Positions 32,277 to 61,361 of a stretch of DNA of 64,000 bases are shown here, one piece after another. The notes under the pieces were generated by a model that was not told where the DNA came from, searched no databases, and was given only the letters and a program-made list of their open reading frames with translations. Location of the stretch: positions 62,001 through 126,000 of IMG/VR virus record IMGVR_UViG_3300028864_000014; one strand, written 5' to 3'. The first letter of the stretch is position 1, and each line of letters begins with the position of its first letter. The position numbers were made by a program, and so were the translations under genes.

Positions 32277-34811
32277 ATGAATTACTCAAAAGAAGTAGAA
32301 GAAGTCATTAAAAAAAGTAAGGACATTGCTATTAAGATTAAGTCTAAATCAATCAGACCTGAACATTTATTTCTATCAATGATAGATGATGAATATTCTG
32401 ATGCATCTCAAATTATGAGGGATCTTAATCTAAATATTGATGCCATTAAGAAAACAATATCTGAGTGGTCTTCTGTGATGCAAGAACAAATTGGAGTAAA
32501 TTCACTCAGAAAAAATGCTTCAATTCCACTGGAATTAGAAACTGAAAAAATTCTAAAAGATTCTGTTGTTTTTGCGAAATCAATGGATTCAGATGAAGTT
32601 TGTATTGAACATGTTTTTTATTCAATATTGGATAATAGCAATAATCTTGTTTCAGAGTTATTTAATAAATCACCTGAAATTTTAAGAAGTTTGAAAAATA
32701 GATTGAAGAATGAAGAAGAAGAACTTAATATTAATGATGAATTAGAAAATGTTAATAATATGGACGAAGAACAAGAAGAAGTAACAGGAAGTTCAAAAAG
32801 TAAGTCAAAAACTAAATTGATTGATCAATTTGGTACAAATCTTACAAATCTCGCAAAAGAAGGAAAACTTGATCCAGTAGTTGGACGTGCAGATGAAATT
32901 AAAAGAATTACACAAATTTTATCCAGACGTAAGAAAAACAATCCTGTATTAGTTGGAGAACCTGGTGTAGGTAAATCAGCAATTGTTGAAGGATTAGCTC
33001 AATTAATCGTAGATGGACTTGTTCCTGAAAATTTACAAAACAAGAAAGTTATCACTCTTGATATGGGTTCATTAGTAGCAGGAACTAAATATCGTGGTGA
33101 ATTTGAGCAACGATTAAGAGGTATTGTAAAAGAGATGGAAGAAAATCCTGATATCATTCTATTTATAGATGAAATTCACACTATTATTGGAGCTGGAGGT
33201 GCTCAAGGATCACTTGATGCTTCTAATATGTTGAAACCAGGATTGGCAAGAGGAACATTCAGATGTATTGGTGCTACTACTCTTGAAGAATATCGTAAAT
33301 ATATTGAAAAAGATGCAGCATTAGAACGTAGATTTCAGAAAGTTGTTGTAGAAGCAACTAGCAAATCAGAAACATTAGAAATTCTTAAGAATATCAAAAA
33401 ACAATATGAAGATCATCACAAAGTTACTTATACTGATGATGCATTAGAAGCTTGTGTCAATTTATCTGACAAATATATATCAGAAAAATTCTTTCCTGAT
33501 AAAGCAATTGATGTTCTAGATGAGGCTGGTGCTATGGTTCATGTGAATGGTACAAGTGCTATTCCTGAAAAAATTGTTGAGCTTAGTAAGAAAATAAAAA
33601 TATCTATAGTAGAAAAACTTGATTGTATTTCTTCACAAAAATATGAACTTGCTGCTGATCATAGAGATAATGAAAAACAATGGAAAGCTGAACTTGAAAG
33701 TGAAAGAGAAGTATGGAGTCAAGAGCACTCAGATAATCGTGCAATGGTAACAGAAAAAGATATTGCTGAGGTTGTCGCTCTTATGACAAAAATTCCAGTA
33801 GATAATGTTTCTATTGATGAAAACAATAAGCTTAAATTTATGGCTGATAAAGTAAAAACTATTGTAATTGGACAAAACGAAGCTGTTGATAAGATAGTTC
33901 AATCAGTCAAGAGATCAAGAGTTGGAATTAATAGTCATGATAAGCCAGTTGGATCATTTATTTTCTCTGGTCCTACAGGAGTAGGTAAAACCTATCTTGC
34001 AAAAATTATGGCAAAAGAATTATTTGGTTCTGAAGATGCGATGATTAGAATTGATATGAGTGAATTTATGGAAAAATTCTCCGTATCTAGATTAGTAGGA
34101 GCACCTCCAGGTTATGTTGGATATGAAGATGGAGGTAAATTAACTGAAGCAGTAAGACGTAAGCCTTATTCTATTATTCTTCTTGATGAAATAGAAAAAG
34201 CTCATCCTGATGTTCAAAATATTCTACTTCAAGTATTGGATGATGGGGTATTAACTGATAGTAATGGCCGTAAAGTGGATTTTAAAAATACTATCATTGT
34301 TATGACAACAAATGCAGGTTCAAGAAAATTGAAAGATTTTGGAACTGGTATTGGATTTGGACTTTCTAAAAACAATCAAGATTCTAAAAATTCTGTTCTT
34401 AAAAAAGAATTAGAAAAAGTGTTTAGTCCAGAATTTTTAAATCGTGTTGATGAAGTTATAAATTTCAATTCATTAAGTAAAGAAAATATTTGTGGTATTA
34501 TTGATGTTGAATGTAAATCATTAATCTCAAATCTTAAAGAAAAAGGATATGATGTAATTATATCTCAATCACTTAAAGATTATTTATTTGAAAATGGTTA
34601 TGATGAAAACTATGGTGCAAGACCATTGAAGAGAGCTATTCAGAGTAATATTGAAGATAAACTTACTGATGCGATTATTGATCAAGAAATCTCAGTTGGT
34701 GATACATTATCATTAATATACGACAAAGATAGTTCATCTGTAAAAATTTCAAAATTATCATCTAAAGAAATTAAAAGTGGTAATATTTTAACTGAAAATA
34801 CCACAGTTTAA
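32277..34811 (+). CDS. clpC: ClpC-type AAA+ chaperone/protease ATPase
   Basis: Clp-N repeats (PEHL, IEHV); Walker A GEPGVGKS and GPTGVGKT; FIDEIH; UVR-like [10 protein letters not shown]; GAPPGYVGY; [10 protein letters not shown]. Confidence 0.95.
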
Positions 34812-53534: not shown

Positions 53535-54002
53535 ATGGCAATAGCACAGTTTTCTAATAGTTTGAATAGCTTACATGATGTAGAGCCTATTTATCTAACA
53601 CAATTTGAAGTTAGATTTAATAATACTTTTTTGACTGATAATTGTAGTTCTATAAAAAACGATATTATGATTTTTAATTTATATACTGTTAATGATGAAT
53701 TACAACCATTTCAGATTATAAATAATATGATTAATAATAATACTATTATAAATTATTTAGAAATTATAAATAGTAAAAAAGATGGTACTATAAAATATTG
53801 CTCTTTTTTGAAAAATTTCTCATTTGTCGAAATTTTAGGATTTCTTGATTTTGATTGGGATTCATGGGATAAAAGTGATTCAAAAATTAAAGATTTACGT
53901 GTAAAATTTAAATATGATAAAATGGATGTAGTCACATCAAAAAATTATAACAATTTTTTAAGAAAAATTAAACTTGAGTGCATAACTAAAAAAGATTCAT
54001 AA
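53535..54002 (+). CDS. tail-tube-like degenerate protein with RxxKL tag
   Basis: MAIAQFSNS...EPIYLTQFEVRF resembles N-termini of jumbo-phage tube proteins as I recall them; ends LRKIKLECI. Confidence 0.5.
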   Translation: MAIAQFSNSLNSLHDVEPIYLTQFEVRFNNTFLTDNCSSIKNDIMIFNLYTVNDELQPFQIINNMINNNTIINYLEIINSKKDGTIKYCSFLKNFSFVEILGFLDFDWDSWDKSDSKIKDLRVKFKYDKMDVVTSKNYNNFLRKIKLECITKKDS

Positions 54003-54022: not shown

Positions 54023-54427
54023 TTATTCTTCTTTTTCTTCTTCTAAGAATTCAATCTCATCATCATCATCAATATTTATCAATTTTATATTATCATCATA
54101 TACTACAAATTCTTTCAATTCTTCTATCATATCATAAAAATCTGATTCATCTAAACTATCAAGAAGGTCTGCCAATTCATCTTTTGATGGTTCATAATTA
54201 TCTTCATCTTTATATCCATCTAAACTATTTATACCTTGATTATCTAGAATTTCTAATATCTGATCAATAGCATCATGTTTATATTCCCAAAATGATTCAG
54301 TATTGTCATTCACTCTAACTTCCCATTTATTTTCTATTTCTTCATCATTAGTGGTATTTTCTATTTCCTCGTCATCAAGAATATTTTCTTTTATATATTC
54401 AAATTCATTAAATTTTTTAAGAGCCAT
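54023..54427 (-). CDS. highly acidic protein with CTS-like N-terminus
   Basis: Starts MALKKFNEFE; TTTTTATATATAC at 54455-54443. Confidence 0.75.
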   Translation of the reverse strand: MALKKFNEFEYIKENILDDEEIENTTNDEEIENKWEVRVNDNTESFWEYKHDAIDQILEILDNQGINSLDGYKDEDNYEPSKDELADLLDSLDESDFYDMIEELKEFVVYDDNIKLINIDDDDEIEFLEEEKEE

Positions 54428-54503
54428 AATTTTTCTTTTTTTGTATATATAAAAATATAACTAACTATTTTTTATTTTCTTCTATTATATCATTTTTTAT
54501 TTG

Positions 54504-54511
54504 TATCTTTG
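54504..54511 (+). promoter_or_regulatory. Bacteroidota-type -7 box TATCTTTG
   Basis: 27 nt upstream of ATG 54539, at the head of the run of RxxKL-tagged genes. Confidence 0.65.
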
Positions 54512-54538
54512 TAATTCAAATAATTTAATAAAATTTAT

Positions 54539-55045
54539 ATGAAAAAATTTGAAACCGTATTTAAGACTTGGATAGGGAAAAATACGAATTCACAAATCAA
54601 AGCAATTGATAAAATTTCATCTGAAACAGGAATTGACGCCGAAGATTGGTTCTTTAATAATTTCTTACGTTTACAAACTGGTGATTTTAGTGGAACTGAT
54701 TTTTTAGAGGTACTACTTGAAAATTATTTATGTAATTTGACTCATAAATTTGAAAAAATTGTAGGAGAATATTTAGAAAGCACAGGAACTAGTTTTTATG
54801 GTGAGCCAATATATGATATAGATATTACATTGGATTATGATTATAAAAAAAATTGTATAGTTATTGACGAACAATATGGAAATAAATCTGATATTGAAAA
54901 AATAATAAAATCAATATCTCTTGATAATAAAATACTATTAACTAAAAATAAAATATTTACATACGTCATTAATGAAACAAAATTAAATATATTCTCAGAA
55001 AAAGAAGCAAGAATATTAAAATTGAAACAATTGAATGAAATATAA
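54539..55045 (+). CDS. hypothetical protein with RxxKL tag
   Basis: Ends EARILKLKQLNEI. Confidence 0.75.
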   Translation: MKKFETVFKTWIGKNTNSQIKAIDKISSETGIDAEDWFFNNFLRLQTGDFSGTDFLEVLLENYLCNLTHKFEKIVGEYLESTGTSFYGEPIYDIDITLDYDYKKNCIVIDEQYGNKSDIEKIIKSISLDNKILLTKNKIFTYVINETKLNIFSEKEARILKLKQLNEI

Positions 55046-55256
55046 AATTGGCGATATTATCATTTTTAATAAATCTAAAAAATCAAAATCAATCATAATA
55101 GAAATTATTCATCAACATTTATTTCATTATTATAGATTTAGATTTATTGATGAAAATAATACTCACATTATGAGTTGTGAAAATGTAGATAATTCATCAG
55201 AATTCTATATTAATTATATAAGAAAAGAAAAATTAAAAAATATAAATGAAATATAA
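55035..55256 (+). CDS. MKYKIGDI (SH3/KOW-like) cassette protein with RxxKL tag
   Basis: MKYKIGDII...IRKEKLKNINEI. Confidence 0.75.
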   Translation: MKYKIGDIIIFNKSKKSKSIIIEIIHQHLFHYYRFRFIDENNTHIMSCENVDNSSEFYINYIRKEKLKNINEI

Positions 55257-55471
55257 AATAGGTGATATTATCATTTTTGAAAGTTTCAAAACAAAAATAG
55301 TAAGAATTATTAATAGTAATAATTGTTATGAAATACATACATTTTTTAATAATCAAACATACACACAAGTTGTTCAATCTGAATATGTAGATAGATGCTC
55401 AAAAATAGATATTAAATCTATGAGAAAAGAAAAATTAAAAAATTTAAATGAAATATAAAATAGGTGATATT
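55221..55471 (+). repeat. two 49-bp direct repeats spanning gene junctions (one mismatch)
   Basis: AGAAAAGAAAAATTAAAAAAT(A/T)TAAATGAAATATAAAATAGGTGATATT at 55221-55269 and 55423-55471. Confidence 0.9.
55246..55458 (+). CDS. MKYKIGDI cassette protein with RxxKL tag
   Basis: MKYKIGDII...MRKEKLKNLNEI. Confidence 0.75.
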   Translation: MKYKIGDIIIFESFKTKIVRIINSNNCYEIHTFFNNQTYTQVVQSEYVDRCSKIDIKSMRKEKLKNLNEI

Positions 55472-55669
55472 GTGGTTGGCGAAATTTTAAAAATTAAAAT
55501 AGTAAGTATTTTAAATAATAAATATGAATATCGTTTAATGTGCTGTAAAAATCCAAAAGTCACAAATTGGACTACTGAATCAATAGACAATAAAACAGAA
55601 TTAGATAAACAATATTTAAGAAAAGAAAAATTAAAAAAATTATATGATACTTCAGCAATGGCTAAATAA
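55448..55669 (+). CDS. MKYKIGDI cassette protein with RxxKL tag
   Basis: MKYKIGDIV...LRKEKLKKLYD. Confidence 0.75.
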   Translation: MKYKIGDIVVGEILKIKIVSILNNKYEYRLMCCKNPKVTNWTTESIDNKTELDKQYLRKEKLKKLYDTSAMAK

Positions 55670-56225
55670 TCCTGATTTTTTGGATAAAAATCAGTTTGAA
55701 AAAAGAAAAGTATTAAAAAGAAGCATATTATCAGATAAATATTGTTTAGTAGGTAAAACATATATATGCTTTGATAATGAAAACTATTGCTCAAATATGA
55801 GATTTTATAGTTCTAATAGCTATTGTAATTTGACTATAGGTAAATCATATGAAATATTAGATCATAAAATTGGTAAGGTAAGAATACTAAATGATAGCAA
55901 CAAAAAAATTTGGACTACAATTAATAGATTTATATATTCAATAAAATATGAAAGAAAAGATAAATTAAAAAAAATATCTAAATCAGATGATGAAATTTTT
56001 ATTGACATATCAGAAAAAAAATTGATTTGTGTTTTATGCGGACAAGAATGGGGAATAGAAAATAAATTCACAAATACATGTGAAAATGTTGAATGTAATG
56101 GCTTTTGTACATGGGGATATTATCCAATGATACCAGAAAGTTTCACAATTGATGATAATGGATTTTGGCATTTAATACCTTTTCCTAAGGATTTAAAAGA
56201 ATTATATAATTATAAAATTAAATAA
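55644..56225 (+). CDS. hypothetical protein with internal RxxKL tag and C-terminal Cys-rich (Zn-binding-like) domain
   Basis: Internal ERKDKLKKI, then CVLCG...CENVECNGFC. Confidence 0.7.
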   Translation: MILQQWLNNPDFLDKNQFEKRKVLKRSILSDKYCLVGKTYICFDNENYCSNMRFYSSNSYCNLTIGKSYEILDHKIGKVRILNDSNKKIWTTINRFIYSIKYERKDKLKKISKSDDEIFIDISEKKLICVLCGQEWGIENKFTNTCENVECNGFCTWGYYPMIPESFTIDDNGFWHLIPFPKDLKELYNYKIK

Positions 56226-56617: not shown

Positions 56618-56881
56618 ATGATAATTGATAAAGGTTGGGGATATTGGGATTTGAAAAATTCCACAAGACTTGATGATATTGCATATTATTCATTTGTTCA
56701 AGATTATGTGAAGGACTATAAAGATTCAATATCATTTATGTCAAATATGGATTATGAACCACCTGATCAAACTTGGTTTTATTATCAAAGAAATAAAAAT
56801 AGTCATTATTCTTATCATTACAATAGTGCAAATAATTTTTTAAGAAAAGAAAAACTTGTTAAATTAAAAGAAATACAATAA
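56618..56881 (+). CDS. small RxxKL-tagged protein, paralog of 42284..42508
   Basis: GYWDLKNSTRLDDIAY...LRKEKLVKL. Confidence 0.7.
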   Translation: MIIDKGWGYWDLKNSTRLDDIAYYSFVQDYVKDYKDSISFMSNMDYEPPDQTWFYYQRNKNSHYSYHYNSANNFLRKEKLVKLKEIQ

Positions 56882-56884
56882 ATA

Positions 56885-57562
56885 ATGAAAAAGAAAATAG
56901 TAATATTCACTGGTGCTGGAATAAGTGCAGAAAGCGGAATTCAAACTTTCAGGGATTCTGACGGACTTTGGGAGCAATATGATGTAAAAGACGTTGCAAC
57001 TATTGATGGTTGGAGAAAAGATAGACAATTAGTTTTAAAATTTTATAATGAAAGACATAAACAATTAGATACTGTAGAACCTAATTCAGCTCATTACTTT
57101 CTTGCTGAATTGGAAAAAAAGTATGATGTTCAGATAGTTACTCAAAATGTCGACGATCTCCATGAGAGAGCAGGAAGTACAAATGTTCTACATCTTCATG
57201 GACAATTAACAAAGATGAGAGCATTTAATAATTTTACTGTTTATGATTGGCCAAAAGATTTTGACATACAAACAGATAGTGTGGATGAAAATGGCGATAC
57301 ATTAAGACCACATATTGTTTGGTTTGGAGAAGCTGTTCCAAATATGGGTAAAGCTGAAAAAATAACAAAAGAAGCAGATATACTTATTGTAATTGGAACA
57401 TCATTACAAGTTTATCCTGCAGCAAATTTATTATATAAAGCAAATTTTAGAGCACCTATATATTATATTGATCCTTCTGATTCTGATATTGGTATAGATA
57501 TTAAAAATTTTACTCATATAAAAGAAACAGCAACAGAAGGAGTTAAAAAATTAAAATTGTGA
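56885..57562 (+). CDS. cobB: Sir2-family NAD-dependent protein deacylase
   Basis: GAGISAESGIQTFR, TQNVDDLHE, LHLHG, RPHIVWFGE and GTSLQVYPAA. Confidence 0.95.
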   Translation: MKKKIVIFTGAGISAESGIQTFRDSDGLWEQYDVKDVATIDGWRKDRQLVLKFYNERHKQLDTVEPNSAHYFLAELEKKYDVQIVTQNVDDLHERAGSTNVLHLHGQLTKMRAFNNFTVYDWPKDFDIQTDSVDENGDTLRPHIVWFGEAVPNMGKAEKITKEADILIVIGTSLQVYPAANLLYKANFRAPIYYIDPSDSDIGIDIKNFTHIKETATEGVKKLKL

Positions 57563-57909: not shown

Positions 57910-58350
57910 ATGCCAAGTGTTACAGAAAAATTAGAAGAATATTTAAAATTTTTAAAAACTCCTGAGGGAGAAGAAAGCATTCTTGAATTTCAAAAAGTAA
58001 TTCAATTGGAAGAAGATATCAAAAATATAAACATTGAAAGAGTAAAAAAAATGTTCAATGATCAAGAAACTTTTGATTCTTTAGTCAATAGAATAATAAG
58101 AAAAAATGGAGAAGAATGGAGGGACAAATGTTACAAAAATGGTTGTACCCCATATCCAACTCAACTATTATACTCGTTGTTTGATTTAGCAGAAAAAGAA
58201 GGAACTGAAATAACAGAATCTATTGATGATTTTACAAGTCATTTTCCGTCTGACATCTGTGAATATAACGGTTGGCAATTTGCTTTGACATATGGTCAAG
58301 GTACATGTAGTAGTATATACTACAATAAAAAATTAATGTATAGAGATTGA
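57910..58350 (+). CDS. hypothetical protein
   Basis: 146 aa ORF. Confidence 0.65.
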   Translation: MPSVTEKLEEYLKFLKTPEGEESILEFQKVIQLEEDIKNINIERVKKMFNDQETFDSLVNRIIRKNGEEWRDKCYKNGCTPYPTQLLYSLFDLAEKEGTEITESIDDFTSHFPSDICEYNGWQFALTYGQGTCSSIYYNKKLMYRD

Positions 58351-58604
58351 ATTCAATTAAAACAGTAAAATCAAGATATAGTATAACTACAATTTCACCA
58401 AATTTTTATAGTAATTTGTCATTAAGTGGCAATACAAATGATATTATTTCTGGTTCAACTGGATTATTAGAGCAAGGTTATATATTTGTTCCTTATATAA
58501 TGGCTACAACAACATCAATTATTACTGAATCAAGAGAACGTAAGATAAACAGACTAAGAGAAGAAAGAGTAGAAAAACTTAAAAAATTAGGATGGAATGA
58601 CTGA
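58347..58604 (+). CDS. small protein with gp23-like G-Y-x-x-x-P-Y motif and RxxKL tag
   Basis: LLEQGYIFVPYIMAT versus T4 gp23 DAGIYYAPYVALT; ERVEKLKKL. Confidence 0.55.
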   Translation: MNSIKTVKSRYSITTISPNFYSNLSLSGNTNDIISGSTGLLEQGYIFVPYIMATTTSIITESRERKINRLREERVEKLKKLGWND

Positions 58605-58875
58605 TAAAAAATATAAACAAGGAGATGAAGTTGTATGTATTAATAATGATGGAGGTTATGATAAATATTTAACAATTGGAAAAAAATATAAAATTCATTA
58701 TATTTATAAAGGAAAATTAACCAATTTAGATCATTTTAGGATAAAATCTGACAAAATAAATTCATTTTTTATAAGTCCATTAGGAATAATTTTTTTATCA
58801 CCAAATGAGTTTAAAATTAAGAAAAGAAAAGAAAAATTAGAAAAAATCAATAAATTAATTTTTAATGATATTTAA
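58597..58875 (+). CDS. GDEVVCI (SH3-like) protein with RxxKL tag
   Basis: QGDEVVCINN...LTIGKKY...RKEKLEKI. Confidence 0.75.
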   Translation: MTDKKYKQGDEVVCINNDGGYDKYLTIGKKYKIHYIYKGKLTNLDHFRIKSDKINSFFISPLGIIFLSPNEFKIKKRKEKLEKINKLIFNDI

Positions 58876-59113
58876 TCAAGGAGATGAAGTTGTTTGTATT
58901 CAAAATGTTGGTTATACTGATTTTTTAACAATTAGCAAATCATATAAAGTTTTACTTTCCTACTATGGAAGTGTAACAGAAACTGAACATATACGTGTTC
59001 AGAAAGATGATAAAAATGGTCATGTTGATATATTTAGTAGTAGATTTATATCTATCAAAGAATTCAAAAAAATAAAAAGAAAAGAAAAACTAAATATATT
59101 AAATCTAATATAA
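58865..59113 (+). CDS. GDEVVCI (SH3-like) protein with RxxKL tag
   Basis: QGDEVVCIQN...LTISKSY...RKEKLNIL. Confidence 0.75.
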   Translation: MIFNQGDEVVCIQNVGYTDFLTISKSYKVLLSYYGSVTETEHIRVQKDDKNGHVDIFSSRFISIKEFKKIKRKEKLNILNLI

Positions 59114-59794: not shown

Positions 59795-60177
59795 TGAATA
59801 TATTTAATAGAAAAAAAAGGGAATTAAAAAGGGAACTAAAATACAATGAACTGAACAAATTATTCAGGATTAAACATGGTATAATTTGTAATTGGAGGAT
59901 TAAAAAATATACTTTGCATCCAACTACAGTTGAAGGACTTGTTTTTGATGAAAAGTTTAATTCATTTTTTTTGAGAGAATATGGAATATTTCCACATTCC
60001 TTTAATGAGTTTGCTTGTATTAACTATTCCTTTGATCCAAAATTTGATAATTTTCCAGTTGATAAATTACAGGAATTATATAATAAAATTGAGTCTGTTT
60101 TTCCTGATCCATTTATTAAAATTAATAGATTAAAAAAATTAAAAAATATTAATTCTGTTAAATATGAAGAACGGTGA
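59791..60177 (+). CDS. hypothetical protein with RxxKL-type tag
   Basis: Ends INRLKKLKNINS. Confidence 0.7.
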   Translation: MMNIFNRKKRELKRELKYNELNKLFRIKHGIICNWRIKKYTLHPTTVEGLVFDEKFNSFFLREYGIFPHSFNEFACINYSFDPKFDNFPVDKLQELYNKIESVFPDPFIKINRLKKLKNINSVKYEER

Positions 60178-60394
60178 TAAAATTACTTATATTAGTAACG
60201 ATATTTGTGTTTTTGATAAATATAAAACATATACTATTATTAATATACACAATGATATTATAACATATGTGAGTTATCTTGATAATTATAAAAAGTTATG
60301 GTATATAGGTTGTAGTTATACTATGAATAAATTCATAACATATAATCAATATAGAAAATTAAAATTAAATAAAATTAATGAAAAAATATGTTAG
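60164..60394 (+). CDS. SH3-like small protein with RxxKL tag
   Basis: MKNGDKITYI...YRKLKLNKI. Confidence 0.7.
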   Translation: MKNGDKITYISNDICVFDKYKTYTIINIHNDIITYVSYLDNYKKLWYIGCSYTMNKFITYNQYRKLKLNKINEKIC

Positions 60395-61103: not shown

Positions 61104-61361
61104 ATGAAATCAATACTTTACAAAAAAGGTGAAAAATTTGTTTGTATAGATAATACATCTAGATATACTGGAGTAGAATTAGGCTATTCTTCTTTGACGT
61201 TATTGAAAATTGGCGGTGTTTACACATTTCGTGATATTAATAGTTATGGCGAAATGAATTTTTTGGAACTACGCGGATATAGTTTCAGAAAGCAAAGGTT
61301 TGTGAAATATTCAGAGTTAAGAAAGATAAAATTAGAAAAATTAAATACTATAAACATATAA
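61104..61361 (+). CDS. SH3-like small protein with RxxKL tag
   Basis: KKGEKFVCIDN...LRKIKLEKL. Confidence 0.75.
   Translation: MKSILYKKGEKFVCIDNTSRYTGVELGYSSLTLLKIGGVYTFRDINSYGEMNFLELRGYSFRKQRFVKYSELRKIKLEKLNTINI

What the first reader, a model, noticed from the sequence alone, without database searches (positions are those of the whole stretch)
55035..55669. Cassette-like array whose junction sequence encodes both the tail of one gene and the head of the next
At 55035-55045, 55246-55256 and 55448-55458 the same 11 nt ATGAAATATAA reads N-E-I-stop in the upstream frame and M-K-Y-K in the downstream frame. Two junctions are 49-bp repeats with one mismatch, while the ~150 bp between them is unrelated. 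Each unit is a conserved head (MKYKIGDI), a variable middle and a conserved tail (RKEKLK). Homologous recombination between junctions could insert, delete or shuffle units while keeping translational coupling, giving an integrase-free cassette array. A related pair (QGDEVVCI) lies at 58597-59113.
Basis: partly seen in the sequence, partly recalled or inferred. Interest (0 to 1): 0.72.

Follow-up and report, generated by a model that had tools for sequence, protein, structure and literature searches.

The report
Recombining arrays of tail-tagged small phage genes
Three tandem, fast-evolving small genes of a very large uncultured peat phage overlap so that the end of one and the start of the next share the same DNA, and comparison with two related phages shows that these conserved ends are where units are gained, lost and swapped.

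Summary
The three units (73, 70 and 73 aa) are paralogues, not unrelated cassettes. Each is modelled as an SH3-like barrel plus a C-terminal helix carrying R-K-x-K-L-x-x-[LI].

That tail is genome-wide. About 61 ORFs (roughly 15%) of this 235-kb, 24% GC phage fragment carry it. It is locked to the reading frame and sits 10-14 residues before the stop, on at least two unrelated folds. Codon usage shows selection at the amino-acid level.

Genes here lack Shine-Dalgarno sites and overlap, so the tail-coding DNA is also the A-rich leader of the next gene.

The recombination idea is partly supported:
- Between the same flanking genes, three related lineages carry 2, 3 and 4 units. Other arrays differ 8 vs 5, 5 vs 3 and 3 vs 1.
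- The QGDEVVCI pair shows a reciprocal swap of gene bodies. One breakpoint lies inside the 12 nt coding R-K-E-K, the other just after the head motif.
- No integrase was found, but a UvsX-like recombinase is encoded.

Within a lineage the array is invariant across samples, and no credible recombinant contigs were seen.

The closest analogue is PeSL-mediated shuffling in T4-type phages, here with coding repeats. The proteins' function is unknown.

The parts
54539..55045 (+). Upstream flanking gene (168 aa). It is unrelated to the units but ends in the tail variant R-I-L-K-L-K-Q-L-N-E-I. Its last 11 nt overlap the start of unit 1.
   Evidence: Orthologues at 58-60% identity flank the array in lineages B and C.
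55035..55256 (+). Unit 1 (73 aa): head MKYKIGDI, SH3-like body, tail RKEKLKNINEI.
   Evidence: Its orthologue is the first unit of lineage C (body 67% nt identity).
55246..55458 (+). Unit 2 (70 aa). Modelled as a five-stranded SH3-like barrel (strands between residues 8 and 54) plus a C-terminal helix (56-69), which is the tail.
   Evidence: pLDDT 90.3; weak KOW, Tudor and PWWP fold matches; profile family.
55448..55669 (+). Unit 3 (73 aa) with an extended tail, RKEKLKKLYDTSAMAK. Its last 26 nt overlap the start of the next gene.
   Evidence: Its orthologue is the last unit of lineage B (79% nt identity overall).
55221..55269 (+). 49-nt junction repeat, copy 1. It holds the tail coding, the 11-nt overlap and the head coding.
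   Evidence: It matches copy 2 at 48 of 49 positions, whereas all other internal junction pairs within or between lineages match at 37-44 of 49.
55423..55471 (+). 49-nt junction repeat, copy 2.
55644..56225 (+). Downstream flanking gene (193 aa). It consists of a unit-like domain with an internal RKDKLKKI (coded at about 55952-55975) fused to a Cys-rich C-terminal domain.
   Evidence: It is 72-83% identical in lineages B and C.
56618..56881 (+). 87-aa gene of the second tail-bearing family ('DDIAY'). It is all-alpha, and the tail RKEKLVKL forms the end of the last helix.
   Evidence: pLDDT 86.5; helices 17-37, 51-60, 62-86.
58347..58604 (+). 85-aa ORF with the tail variant RVEKLKKLGWND, overlapping the start of the first QGDEVVCI gene. 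In lineage C a 238-aa gene is inserted inside this tail-coding sequence.
58597..58875 (+). First gene of the QGDEVVCI pair (92 aa). Its body is orthologous to the SECOND gene of lineages B and C. Its extreme head and tail are orthologous to their FIRST gene.
58825..58839 (+). R-K-E-K-L coding 15-mer of the first pair gene. The 3' crossover of the body swap lies in its first 12 nt.
   Evidence: Upstream of it the sequence is lineage-C second-gene type. From the Leu codon (TTA) onward it is lineage-C first-gene type.
58865..59113 (+). Second gene of the QGDEVVCI pair (82 aa). Its body resembles the first gene of lineage C, and its tail (CTA Leu codon, short NILNLI end) matches the second gene of lineages B and C.
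60164..60394 (+). Single 76-aa family member with tail RKLKLNKINEKIC. It is present in lineage B and absent from lineage C.
61104..61361 (+). Single 85-aa family member (KKGEKFVCIDN type). Lineage B has two copies, joined by the same LNEI-stop/MKYK overlap.
53535..54002 (+). 155-aa ORF with an unrelated body and the tail RKIKLECI.

Best explanation
What it is. The locus is a tandem array of a fast-evolving multigene family of small phage proteins. Each protein is an SH3-like beta-barrel followed by a conserved basic amphipathic C-terminal helix, R-K-x-K-L-x-x-[LI], often followed by N-E or N-D. The array lies in a very large, AT-rich, uncultured peat phage.

Why the ends are conserved. Genes of this phage have no Shine-Dalgarno sites. 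They are packed so that each stop lies 4-32 nt after the next ATG. The last roughly 25-50 nt of a gene therefore do three jobs: they code the tail helix, they form the A-rich, G-poor leader of the next gene, and they partly code the next gene's head. This triple constraint keeps heads and tails nearly identical while the bodies diverge to saturation.

What follows from that. The resulting 20-50-nt direct repeats are substrates for homologous recombination, probably by the phage's own UvsX-like recombinase. Unequal exchange and gene conversion between them expand and contract arrays and move bodies between positions without breaking frames or overlaps.

Shown:
- The anatomy of the array and its overlaps.
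- That the tail is selected at the protein level.
- Copy-number differences between lineages.
- One reciprocal body swap with breakpoints at the head region and inside the tail-coding motif.
- One pair of homogenised junctions.

Inferred:
- The recombination enzyme.
- Translational coupling between the overlapping genes.
- Whether the swap went through an excised circle or through two gene conversions.
- That the tail is a docking module for a common partner. The proteins' function is unknown; a host-interaction or accessory role is my guess.
For: The tail is a real, protein-level motif.
- The pattern occurs 83 times in frame on the + strand, against about 4.5 in codon-shuffled genomes and 9 on the - strand. 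Of the 83, 66 lie 5-24 residues before a stop.
- It is carried by 61 ORFs whose bodies fall into at least 33 BLAST clusters.
- Position 3 of the motif is free. Synonymous codons at R1, K2, K4 and L5 follow genome usage.
- It sits on two unrelated folds: an SH3-like barrel and an all-alpha protein.

The tail-coding DNA is also a leader.
- Only 3 of 200 long ORFs have an SD-like 4-mer upstream. A is 65-68% and G is 2-4% at positions -10 to -20.
- The next ATG lies 23-38 nt after the R codon in most cases. Overlaps of 4, 7, 8, 11, 14 and 17 nt are common.

Arrays change between lineages.
- The MKYK array has 2, 3 and 4 units.
- Other arrays differ 8 vs 5, 5 vs 3, 3 vs 1, 3 vs 1 and 1 vs 2.

Body swap. 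Segment identities and the exact switch point lie inside the R-K-E-K codons.

Insertion. In lineage C a 238-aa gene sits inside a tail-coding sequence, with a 12-nt duplication.

Homogenised junction. The two internal junctions of the window match at 48 of 49 positions, against 37-44 for all other internal pairs.

Fast bodies. Units are 41-68% identical between lineages, where neighbouring genes are 72-95%.

Enzymes. A UvsX-like recombinase and an SbcCD-like nuclease are present. No tyrosine integrase is present.

The architecture is widespread.
- 1703 representative clusters match the family profile.
- Other contigs consist almost entirely of about 25-30 such genes, many of them joined by 25-nt dual-coded junctions.
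Against: - Only three lineages could be compared.
- Within each lineage the array is identical across many peat samples, so ongoing recombination is not observed.
- The 'joints' in assembled contigs all have sides of 34 nt or less at the repeated motif, so they are not credible recombinants.
- Gene-sized insertions and deletions would be seen at gene boundaries under any mechanism, because selection removes broken genes.
- Most of the head and tail conservation is expected from purifying selection alone.
- Ile at tail position 8 uses ATA in 28 of 31 cases, against 45% genome-wide. Some nucleotide-level constraint therefore exists as well.
- No partner or function for the tail is known.
Confidence: 0.68

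Rival explanations
1. Ordinary old tandem duplicates. The arrays are ancient paralogues whose ends are conserved only by purifying selection on protein motifs and overlaps. Copy-number differences arise from generic duplication and deletion. The conserved junctions have no special role in recombination.
For: The units are homologous along their whole length. The tail is under amino-acid-level selection. The arrays are invariant within lineages. In lineage C the junctions are not homogenised, matching at 39-41 of 49 positions.
Against: The pair's body swap has breakpoints exactly in the R-K-E-K codons and near the head motif, and position-specific ends are kept. The two internal junctions of the window match at 48 of 49 positions beside saturated bodies. 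An insertion sits inside a tail-coding sequence. The same tail on unrelated folds requires transfer of the tail between genes.
Confidence: 0.17
2. A regulatory cassette in disguise. The conserved 'tail' is primarily an RNA or DNA signal for the downstream gene, such as a translation-initiation leader or promoter. The unit that duplicates would then be leader plus gene, and the peptide motif would be a by-product.
For: Leaders are SD-less and A-rich at -10 to -20, exactly where the tail codons lie. There is an ATA bias at tail position 8. In lineage C, a remnant of tail-coding sequence survives as a non-coding leader upstream of the next gene.
Against: The motif is locked to the reading frame of the upstream ORF. 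Of 45 near-matches to the 20-mer on the + strand, most coincide with in-frame tails. The motif-to-ATG distance varies from 23 to 38 nt and falls in two frame classes. Position 3 is free and Leu codons vary as they do genome-wide. Internal copies exist far from any start, as in the 193-aa gene and in fused two-unit proteins. Promoter-like sites are at chance level.
Confidence: 0.1
3. Frameshift-fused polyproteins. The overlaps are programmed frameshift sites, so ribosomes read several units as one multi-domain protein.
For: Relatives exist with 2-6 units fused in one ORF. A-rich runs lie just before the overlaps.
Against: The overlaps fall in both relative frames and have many lengths. No conserved slippery-site-plus-structure geometry was seen. 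Every unit has its own ATG at a conserved head.
Confidence: 0.03

Closest known systems
PeSL (promoter-early stem-loop) mediated modular shuffling in T4-type phages (Arbiol et al. 2010, PMC2839356; 2014 follow-up paper, PMC4122927)
   Same: Dispersed conserved repeats flank small non-essential ORFs in plastic regions. Insertions, deletions and replacements between close relatives map to them. No integrase is involved. The phage's own homologous recombination is invoked, and excision and reinsertion of mini-circles is proposed. One excision (head x head) followed by reinsertion (tail x tail) would produce exactly the body swap seen here (inference).
   Different: PeSLs are roughly 100-bp intergenic promoter-plus-terminator cassettes. 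Here there is no intergenic DNA. The repeats are 20-50 nt of protein-coding sequence (tail of one gene, head of the next). No promoter or terminator signal was found. The flanked genes are paralogues, not unrelated ORFans.
Lineage-specific expansions of small domains in jumbo phages, for example about 35 zinc-ribbon copies in Bacillus phage G (PMC7824862)
   Same: Dozens of copies of a small domain in one very large phage genome, with unknown function.
   Different: Here the shared element is a short C-terminal helix carried by at least two unrelated folds. The genes sit in overlapping tandem arrays whose copy number differs between close lineages.
Integron gene-cassette arrays
   Same: Serial, same-strand, promoterless small genes separated by a repeated junction. 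Units are gained and lost.
   Different: There is no IntI-type integrase. There are no attC-like inverted repeats at the junctions. The units are paralogues, and the junction is coding.
Tandem multigene families evolving by unequal crossing-over and gene conversion (concerted or birth-and-death evolution; general knowledge)
   Same: Copy-number change, homogenised segments and mosaic members.
   Different: The conversion-prone segments are confined to the dual-coded gene ends, while the bodies are saturated with substitutions.
SH3-like small barrels (KOW of NusG/Spt5, Tudor, PWWP)
   Same: The predicted fold of the units. The best PDB matches have TM 0.55-0.6. One fused relative was annotated 'NusG' by a source.
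   Different: There is no significant sequence or profile match to any Pfam family, and Foldseek E-values are 0.03 or worse. The C-terminal RKxKL helix is not part of those domains.

Membership tests
PeSL-type mobile regulatory cassettes | A conserved intergenic element of about 100 bp holding a sigma-70-like early promoter and a stem-loop terminator | tested here: not met
   The units overlap, so there is no intergenic DNA. Promoter-like hits number 97 against 97.7 expected. No terminator-like site lies in the array.
PeSL-type mobile regulatory cassettes | Insertions, deletions and replacements between close relatives map to the repeated element | tested here: met
   Copy number 2, 3 and 4. 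A body swap and an insertion have breakpoints in the tail- or head-coding repeats.
PeSL-type mobile regulatory cassettes | Excised mini-circles detectable in phage DNA | not testable with these tools
   Only assembled contigs of the runs were available. Joints had sides of 34 nt or less at the repeat.
Integron cassette array | An IntI tyrosine recombinase nearby | tested here: not met
   PF00589 has no match in the 235-kb record. The record is only a fragment of the genome.
Integron cassette array | An attC imperfect inverted repeat at each cassette boundary | tested here: not met
   No inverted repeat recurs at the junctions.
Tandem paralogue array (multigene family) | Adjacent units are homologous proteins | tested here: met
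   38-47% amino-acid identity, one HMM family and one confident fold.
Tandem paralogue array (multigene family) | Copy number varies between related genomes | tested here: met
Translationally coupled overlapping genes | The stop of the upstream gene overlaps or abuts the start of the downstream gene on the same strand | tested here: met
   Overlaps of 11, 11 and 26 nt occur here. Genome-wide, 53 of the 61 tail-bearing ORFs overlap the next ATG start.
Translationally coupled overlapping genes | Downstream translation depends on upstream translation | not testable with these tools
   This needs reporter or ribosome-profiling experiments.
KOW / Tudor / PWWP SH3-like domains | Significant profile match to the family | tested here: not met
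   No Pfam hit at E of 1 or below for the units. There is fold resemblance only.

The most novel reading that the evidence does not exclude
The R-K-x-K-L-x-x-[LI] helix may be a portable address tag read by one common partner. One candidate is the phage's own ClpC-like unfoldase plus ClpP, which would remove a whole class of small proteins on schedule. Another is a single host hub. On this reading, the dual-coded tail/head junction is a selected, frame-preserving 'splice site' for DNA-level domain shuffling. It would let the phage mint and diversify tagged proteins without an integrase.
Probability: 0.12. Interest if true: 0.85.

Novelty: new variant of a known kind. Interest (0 to 1): 0.6.

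Why it matters
Hyperplastic regions full of small ORFans make up most of the unexplained content of large phage genomes. How they turn over is known mechanistically only for the PeSL cassettes of T4-type phages.

This locus shows a second route. Conserved protein termini, frozen by dual coding and by the need for an A-rich leader in an SD-less system, act as the homology for frame-preserving gain, loss and exchange of gene bodies.

It also exposes an uncharacterised C-terminal motif. The motif is shared by about 15% of the ORFs of this phage fragment, across unrelated folds. The profile of the motif-bearing SH3-like family matches well over a thousand metagenomic protein clusters. That pattern points to a common partner that could be found experimentally.

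Tried and rejected
- Pfam and PHROGs scans of the units and neighbours gave nothing usable.
- blastn of the region against GenBank phages matched only the sirtuin gene.
- tblastn of a consensus-like family member against 50,697 phage records gave no match.
- The word-index protein search found only the two sister lineages.
- The metagenome-contig scan with the 193-aa flanking protein found nothing.
- A further viral scan returned the same three lineages.
- A full-text search for the motif string returned only irrelevant papers.
- Laying Logan contigs of four peat runs confirmed the array is intact and identical. All joints were short-sided matches at the repeated motif, so they are not counted as recombinants.
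- Complex prediction of a unit-2 homodimer returned 'no answer' (score 0.00). This is not evidence either way.
- Foldseek of the all-alpha family model found no meaningful match.
- The sigma-70 promoter scan was at chance level.
- A programmed-frameshift reading was considered and set aside because the overlaps use both frames and many lengths.
- An integron reading was rejected.

Full report
**Source**

The window is bases 62001-126000 of a single 235,318-bp virus record with 24% GC. CheckV rates the record only 33% complete. Near-identical sequence is present in many peat metagenomes.

The record encodes:
- tailed-phage functions: baseplate or tail-lysozyme-like proteins;
- replication and repair enzymes: RNR, a DnaB-like helicase, a UvsX-like recombinase and an SbcCD-like nuclease;
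- a sirtuin, a peptide deformylase and an NAD-dependent ligase;
- a ClpC/ClpB-type ATPase and ClpP.

**Observation**

The 11-mer ATGAAATATAA occurs in the window only at 55035, 55246 and 55448. At each site it closes one ORF (N-E-I-stop) and opens the next (M-K-Y-K). The 11-mer count alone is not significant: 16 of 100 shuffles reach 3 copies.

The 49-nt junctions 55221-55269 and 55423-55471 differ at one base. They have no other match in the record even with 9 mismatches.

The three ORFs are 73, 70 and 73 aa. The first junction follows an unrelated 168-aa gene that ends in a tail variant. The third unit overlaps the next gene (193 aa) by 26 nt, with its ATG at the same place relative to the tail. 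That gene itself contains a unit with an internal RKDKLKKI followed by a Cys-rich domain.

- The units share 38-47% amino-acid identity.
- A 177-nt stretch aligns at 76% DNA identity.
- A family alignment led by unit 2 gives a confident model, pLDDT 90.3: an SH3-like five-stranded barrel plus a C-terminal helix.

The central bodies are, however, near saturation at the DNA level, at 37-57% between paralogues.

**The tail is a genome-wide protein motif**
- R-[KR]-x-K-[LI]-x-x-[LIV] occurs 83 times in frame on the + strand. Codon-shuffled genomes give about 4.5, and the - strand has 9. Of the 83, 66 lie 5-24 residues before a stop.
- Sixty-one ORFs of 39-239 aa carry it, about 15% of roughly 400 ORFs and 50 of 161 small + strand ORFs.
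- With the tail removed, their bodies fall into at least 33 BLAST clusters. These include a 13-member 'DDIAY' family and the SH3-like family.
- The DDIAY member at 56618-56881 is modelled as all-alpha, with the tail at the end of its last helix. The same tail therefore sits on two unrelated folds.
- Position 3 of the motif is free. Codons at R1, K2, K4 and L5 follow genome usage (for example TTA 0.71, CTT 0.18, CTA 0.06, TTG 0.04 against 0.60, 0.14, 0.08, 0.15). Selection therefore acts on the amino acids.
- One exception is Ile at position 8, which uses ATA in 28 of 31 cases against 45% genome-wide. This hints at an added nucleotide-level constraint.

**The tail-coding DNA is also the leader of the next gene**
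- Only 3 of 200 long ORFs have an SD-like 4-mer upstream. A is 65-68% and G is 2-4% at positions -10 to -20.
- The next ATG lies 23-38 nt after the R codon in most cases. Overlaps of 4 nt (15 cases), 11 (8), 14 (6), 8 (5), 7 (4) and 17 (4) occur. The ATG often sits inside N-E or Y-D codons.
- Both relative frames are used. The motif is therefore tied to the upstream protein's C-terminus, not to a fixed distance from the ATG.

**Relatives**

Three lineages were found:
- The window's own lineage is 100% identical over 16.5 kb in contigs from three metagenomes.
- Lineage B has conserved neighbours up to 92% identical.
- Lineage C has conserved neighbours about 82-96% identical. It includes a 235,581-bp contig from one of the same samples.

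Between the same 168-aa and roughly 190-aa flanking genes, lineage B has 2 units, the window has 3 and lineage C has 4.

Within a lineage the array is fixed across samples. Assembled contigs from four runs span 54400-55868 with no difference.

Units are 41-68% identical between lineages, where neighbouring genes are 72-95%.

In a second region (genome 176-196 kb) other arrays differ between the window and lineage B: 8 vs 5, 5 vs 3, 3 vs 1 and 3 vs 1. The KKGEKFVCIDN gene is single here but doubled in lineage B, joined by the same LNEI-stop/MKYK overlap.

**Breakpoints in the QGDEVVCI pair**
- The body of the window's first gene matches the second gene of lineage C at 87, 75 and 81% in three segments. 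It matches the first gene of C at only 70, 45 and 61%.
- Its tail matches the first gene of C at 79%, against 63% for the second.
- The tail of the window's second gene matches the second genes of lineages C and B at 85% and 89%.
- Anchored on the motif, the switch lies inside the 12 nt coding R-K-E-K. Upstream, the sequences pair crosswise. From the Leu codon onward (TTA in first genes, CTA in second genes) they pair by position.
- The 5' switch lies about 30 nt after the GDEVVCI motif. The N-terminal extensions are also position-specific.
- Lineage B has the same body order as lineage C, so the window's order is the derived one.
- One head-by-head excision followed by tail-by-tail reinsertion of a circle would give this pattern. 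So would two gene conversions. Both are inference.

**Other events at the repeats**
- In lineage C a 238-aa gene is inserted inside the tail-coding sequence of the preceding ORF, with a 12-nt duplication. A tail remnant is left behind as a non-coding leader.
- The two internal junctions of the window match at 48 of 49 positions. All other internal junction pairs, within or between lineages, match at 37-44. Heads and tails within the window are 90-96% identical, against 71-79% for the window-to-C orthologues. This fits a recent conversion.

**Breadth**
- A profile of 31 family members finds 1703 representative clusters at E of 1e-3 or below. Most are 68-90 aa and match end to end. Some have 2-6 fused units.
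- None carries an informative name. No GenBank phage matches.
- Other 23% GC contigs consist almost entirely of about 25-30 such genes. Many of them are joined by 25-nt overlaps in which '...KICSKQEIE-stop' and 'MFKxGDRV' share the same DNA. The dual-coded junction is therefore a clade-wide architecture with several junction types.

**Interpretation**

The anatomy is best read as overlapping tandem paralogues. Their ends are held constant by protein function, by dual coding and by the leader requirement. These conserved ends act as homology for recombination that changes unit number and exchanges bodies.

This works like PeSL-mediated shuffling in T4-type phages (PMC2839356), but it fails the defining PeSL features: there is no intergenic element, promoter or terminator. 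It is not an integron.

Ongoing recombination, circles, translational coupling and the role of the tail remain untested. The homodimer prediction gave no answer.

**Verdict**

This is a new variant of a known kind, with interest scored at 0.6.

Noticed in passing
window 32277-34808 (+) and G000:C1:130534-131052 (+; locus L028): The phage encodes both a two-ring ClpC/ClpB-type ATPase of 844 aa (Clp_N, AAA, AAA_2 and ClpB_D2-small domains) and a ClpP protease (E 3.7e-55). Two tail-bearing ORFs lie directly downstream of clpP.
   Followed up: partly
whole record G000: CheckV rates the 235-kb record at 33% complete, and a sister-lineage protein occurs on contigs up to 711 kb. The phage may be far larger than the record.
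   Followed up: no
window 56885-57562 (+): The sirtuin (SIR2) gene is present here and in lineage C but absent from lineage B. The difference starts right after the R-K-E-K-L codons of the preceding 87-aa gene. The sirtuin itself ends in K-K-L-K-L-stop.
   Followed up: partly
L004 5634-6350 (lineage C), corresponding to window ~58590: A 238-aa gene is inserted inside a tail-coding sequence with a 12-nt duplication (CTYAAMAAATTA). A remnant of the old tail persists as the non-coding leader of the next gene.
   Followed up: partly
L030 1-6912, L031, L029 1-7576: Other 23% GC metagenomic contigs are almost entirely arrays of about 25-30 small same-strand genes carrying the same tail. Many are joined by 25-nt overlaps that code '...KICSKQEIE-stop' and 'MFKxGDRV' in two frames.
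   Followed up: partly
whole record G000: Shine-Dalgarno-like 4-mers precede only 3 of 200 long ORFs. Upstream regions are 65-68% A and 2-4% G at -10 to -20, suggesting an SD-independent host such as a Bacteroidota-like lineage (the host is inference).
   Followed up: no
61 tail motifs genome-wide: Ile at tail position 8 uses ATA in 28 of 31 cases, against 45% ATA genome-wide. This is the only clear nucleotide-level bias inside the motif.
   Followed up: no
window 55644-56225 (+): The 193-aa gene after the array is a unit-like domain with an internal RKDKLKKI, fused to a Cys-rich (CxxC...CxxxxC) C-terminal domain. It has only a weak DUF7040 hit.
   Followed up: no
G000:C1:195492-232392 (-): A long series of large paralogous proteins has the N-terminus 'MINIQLASEEWV...' followed by Gly/Ser/Thr-rich collagen-like stretches. 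They are probably a diversified tail-fibre set.
   Followed up: no
P0003, P0005, P0008, P0017, P0020: Some metagenomic relatives carry 2-6 SH3-like units fused in one ORF. In the two-unit forms the first unit's RKxKL tail is kept as an internal linker.
   Followed up: no
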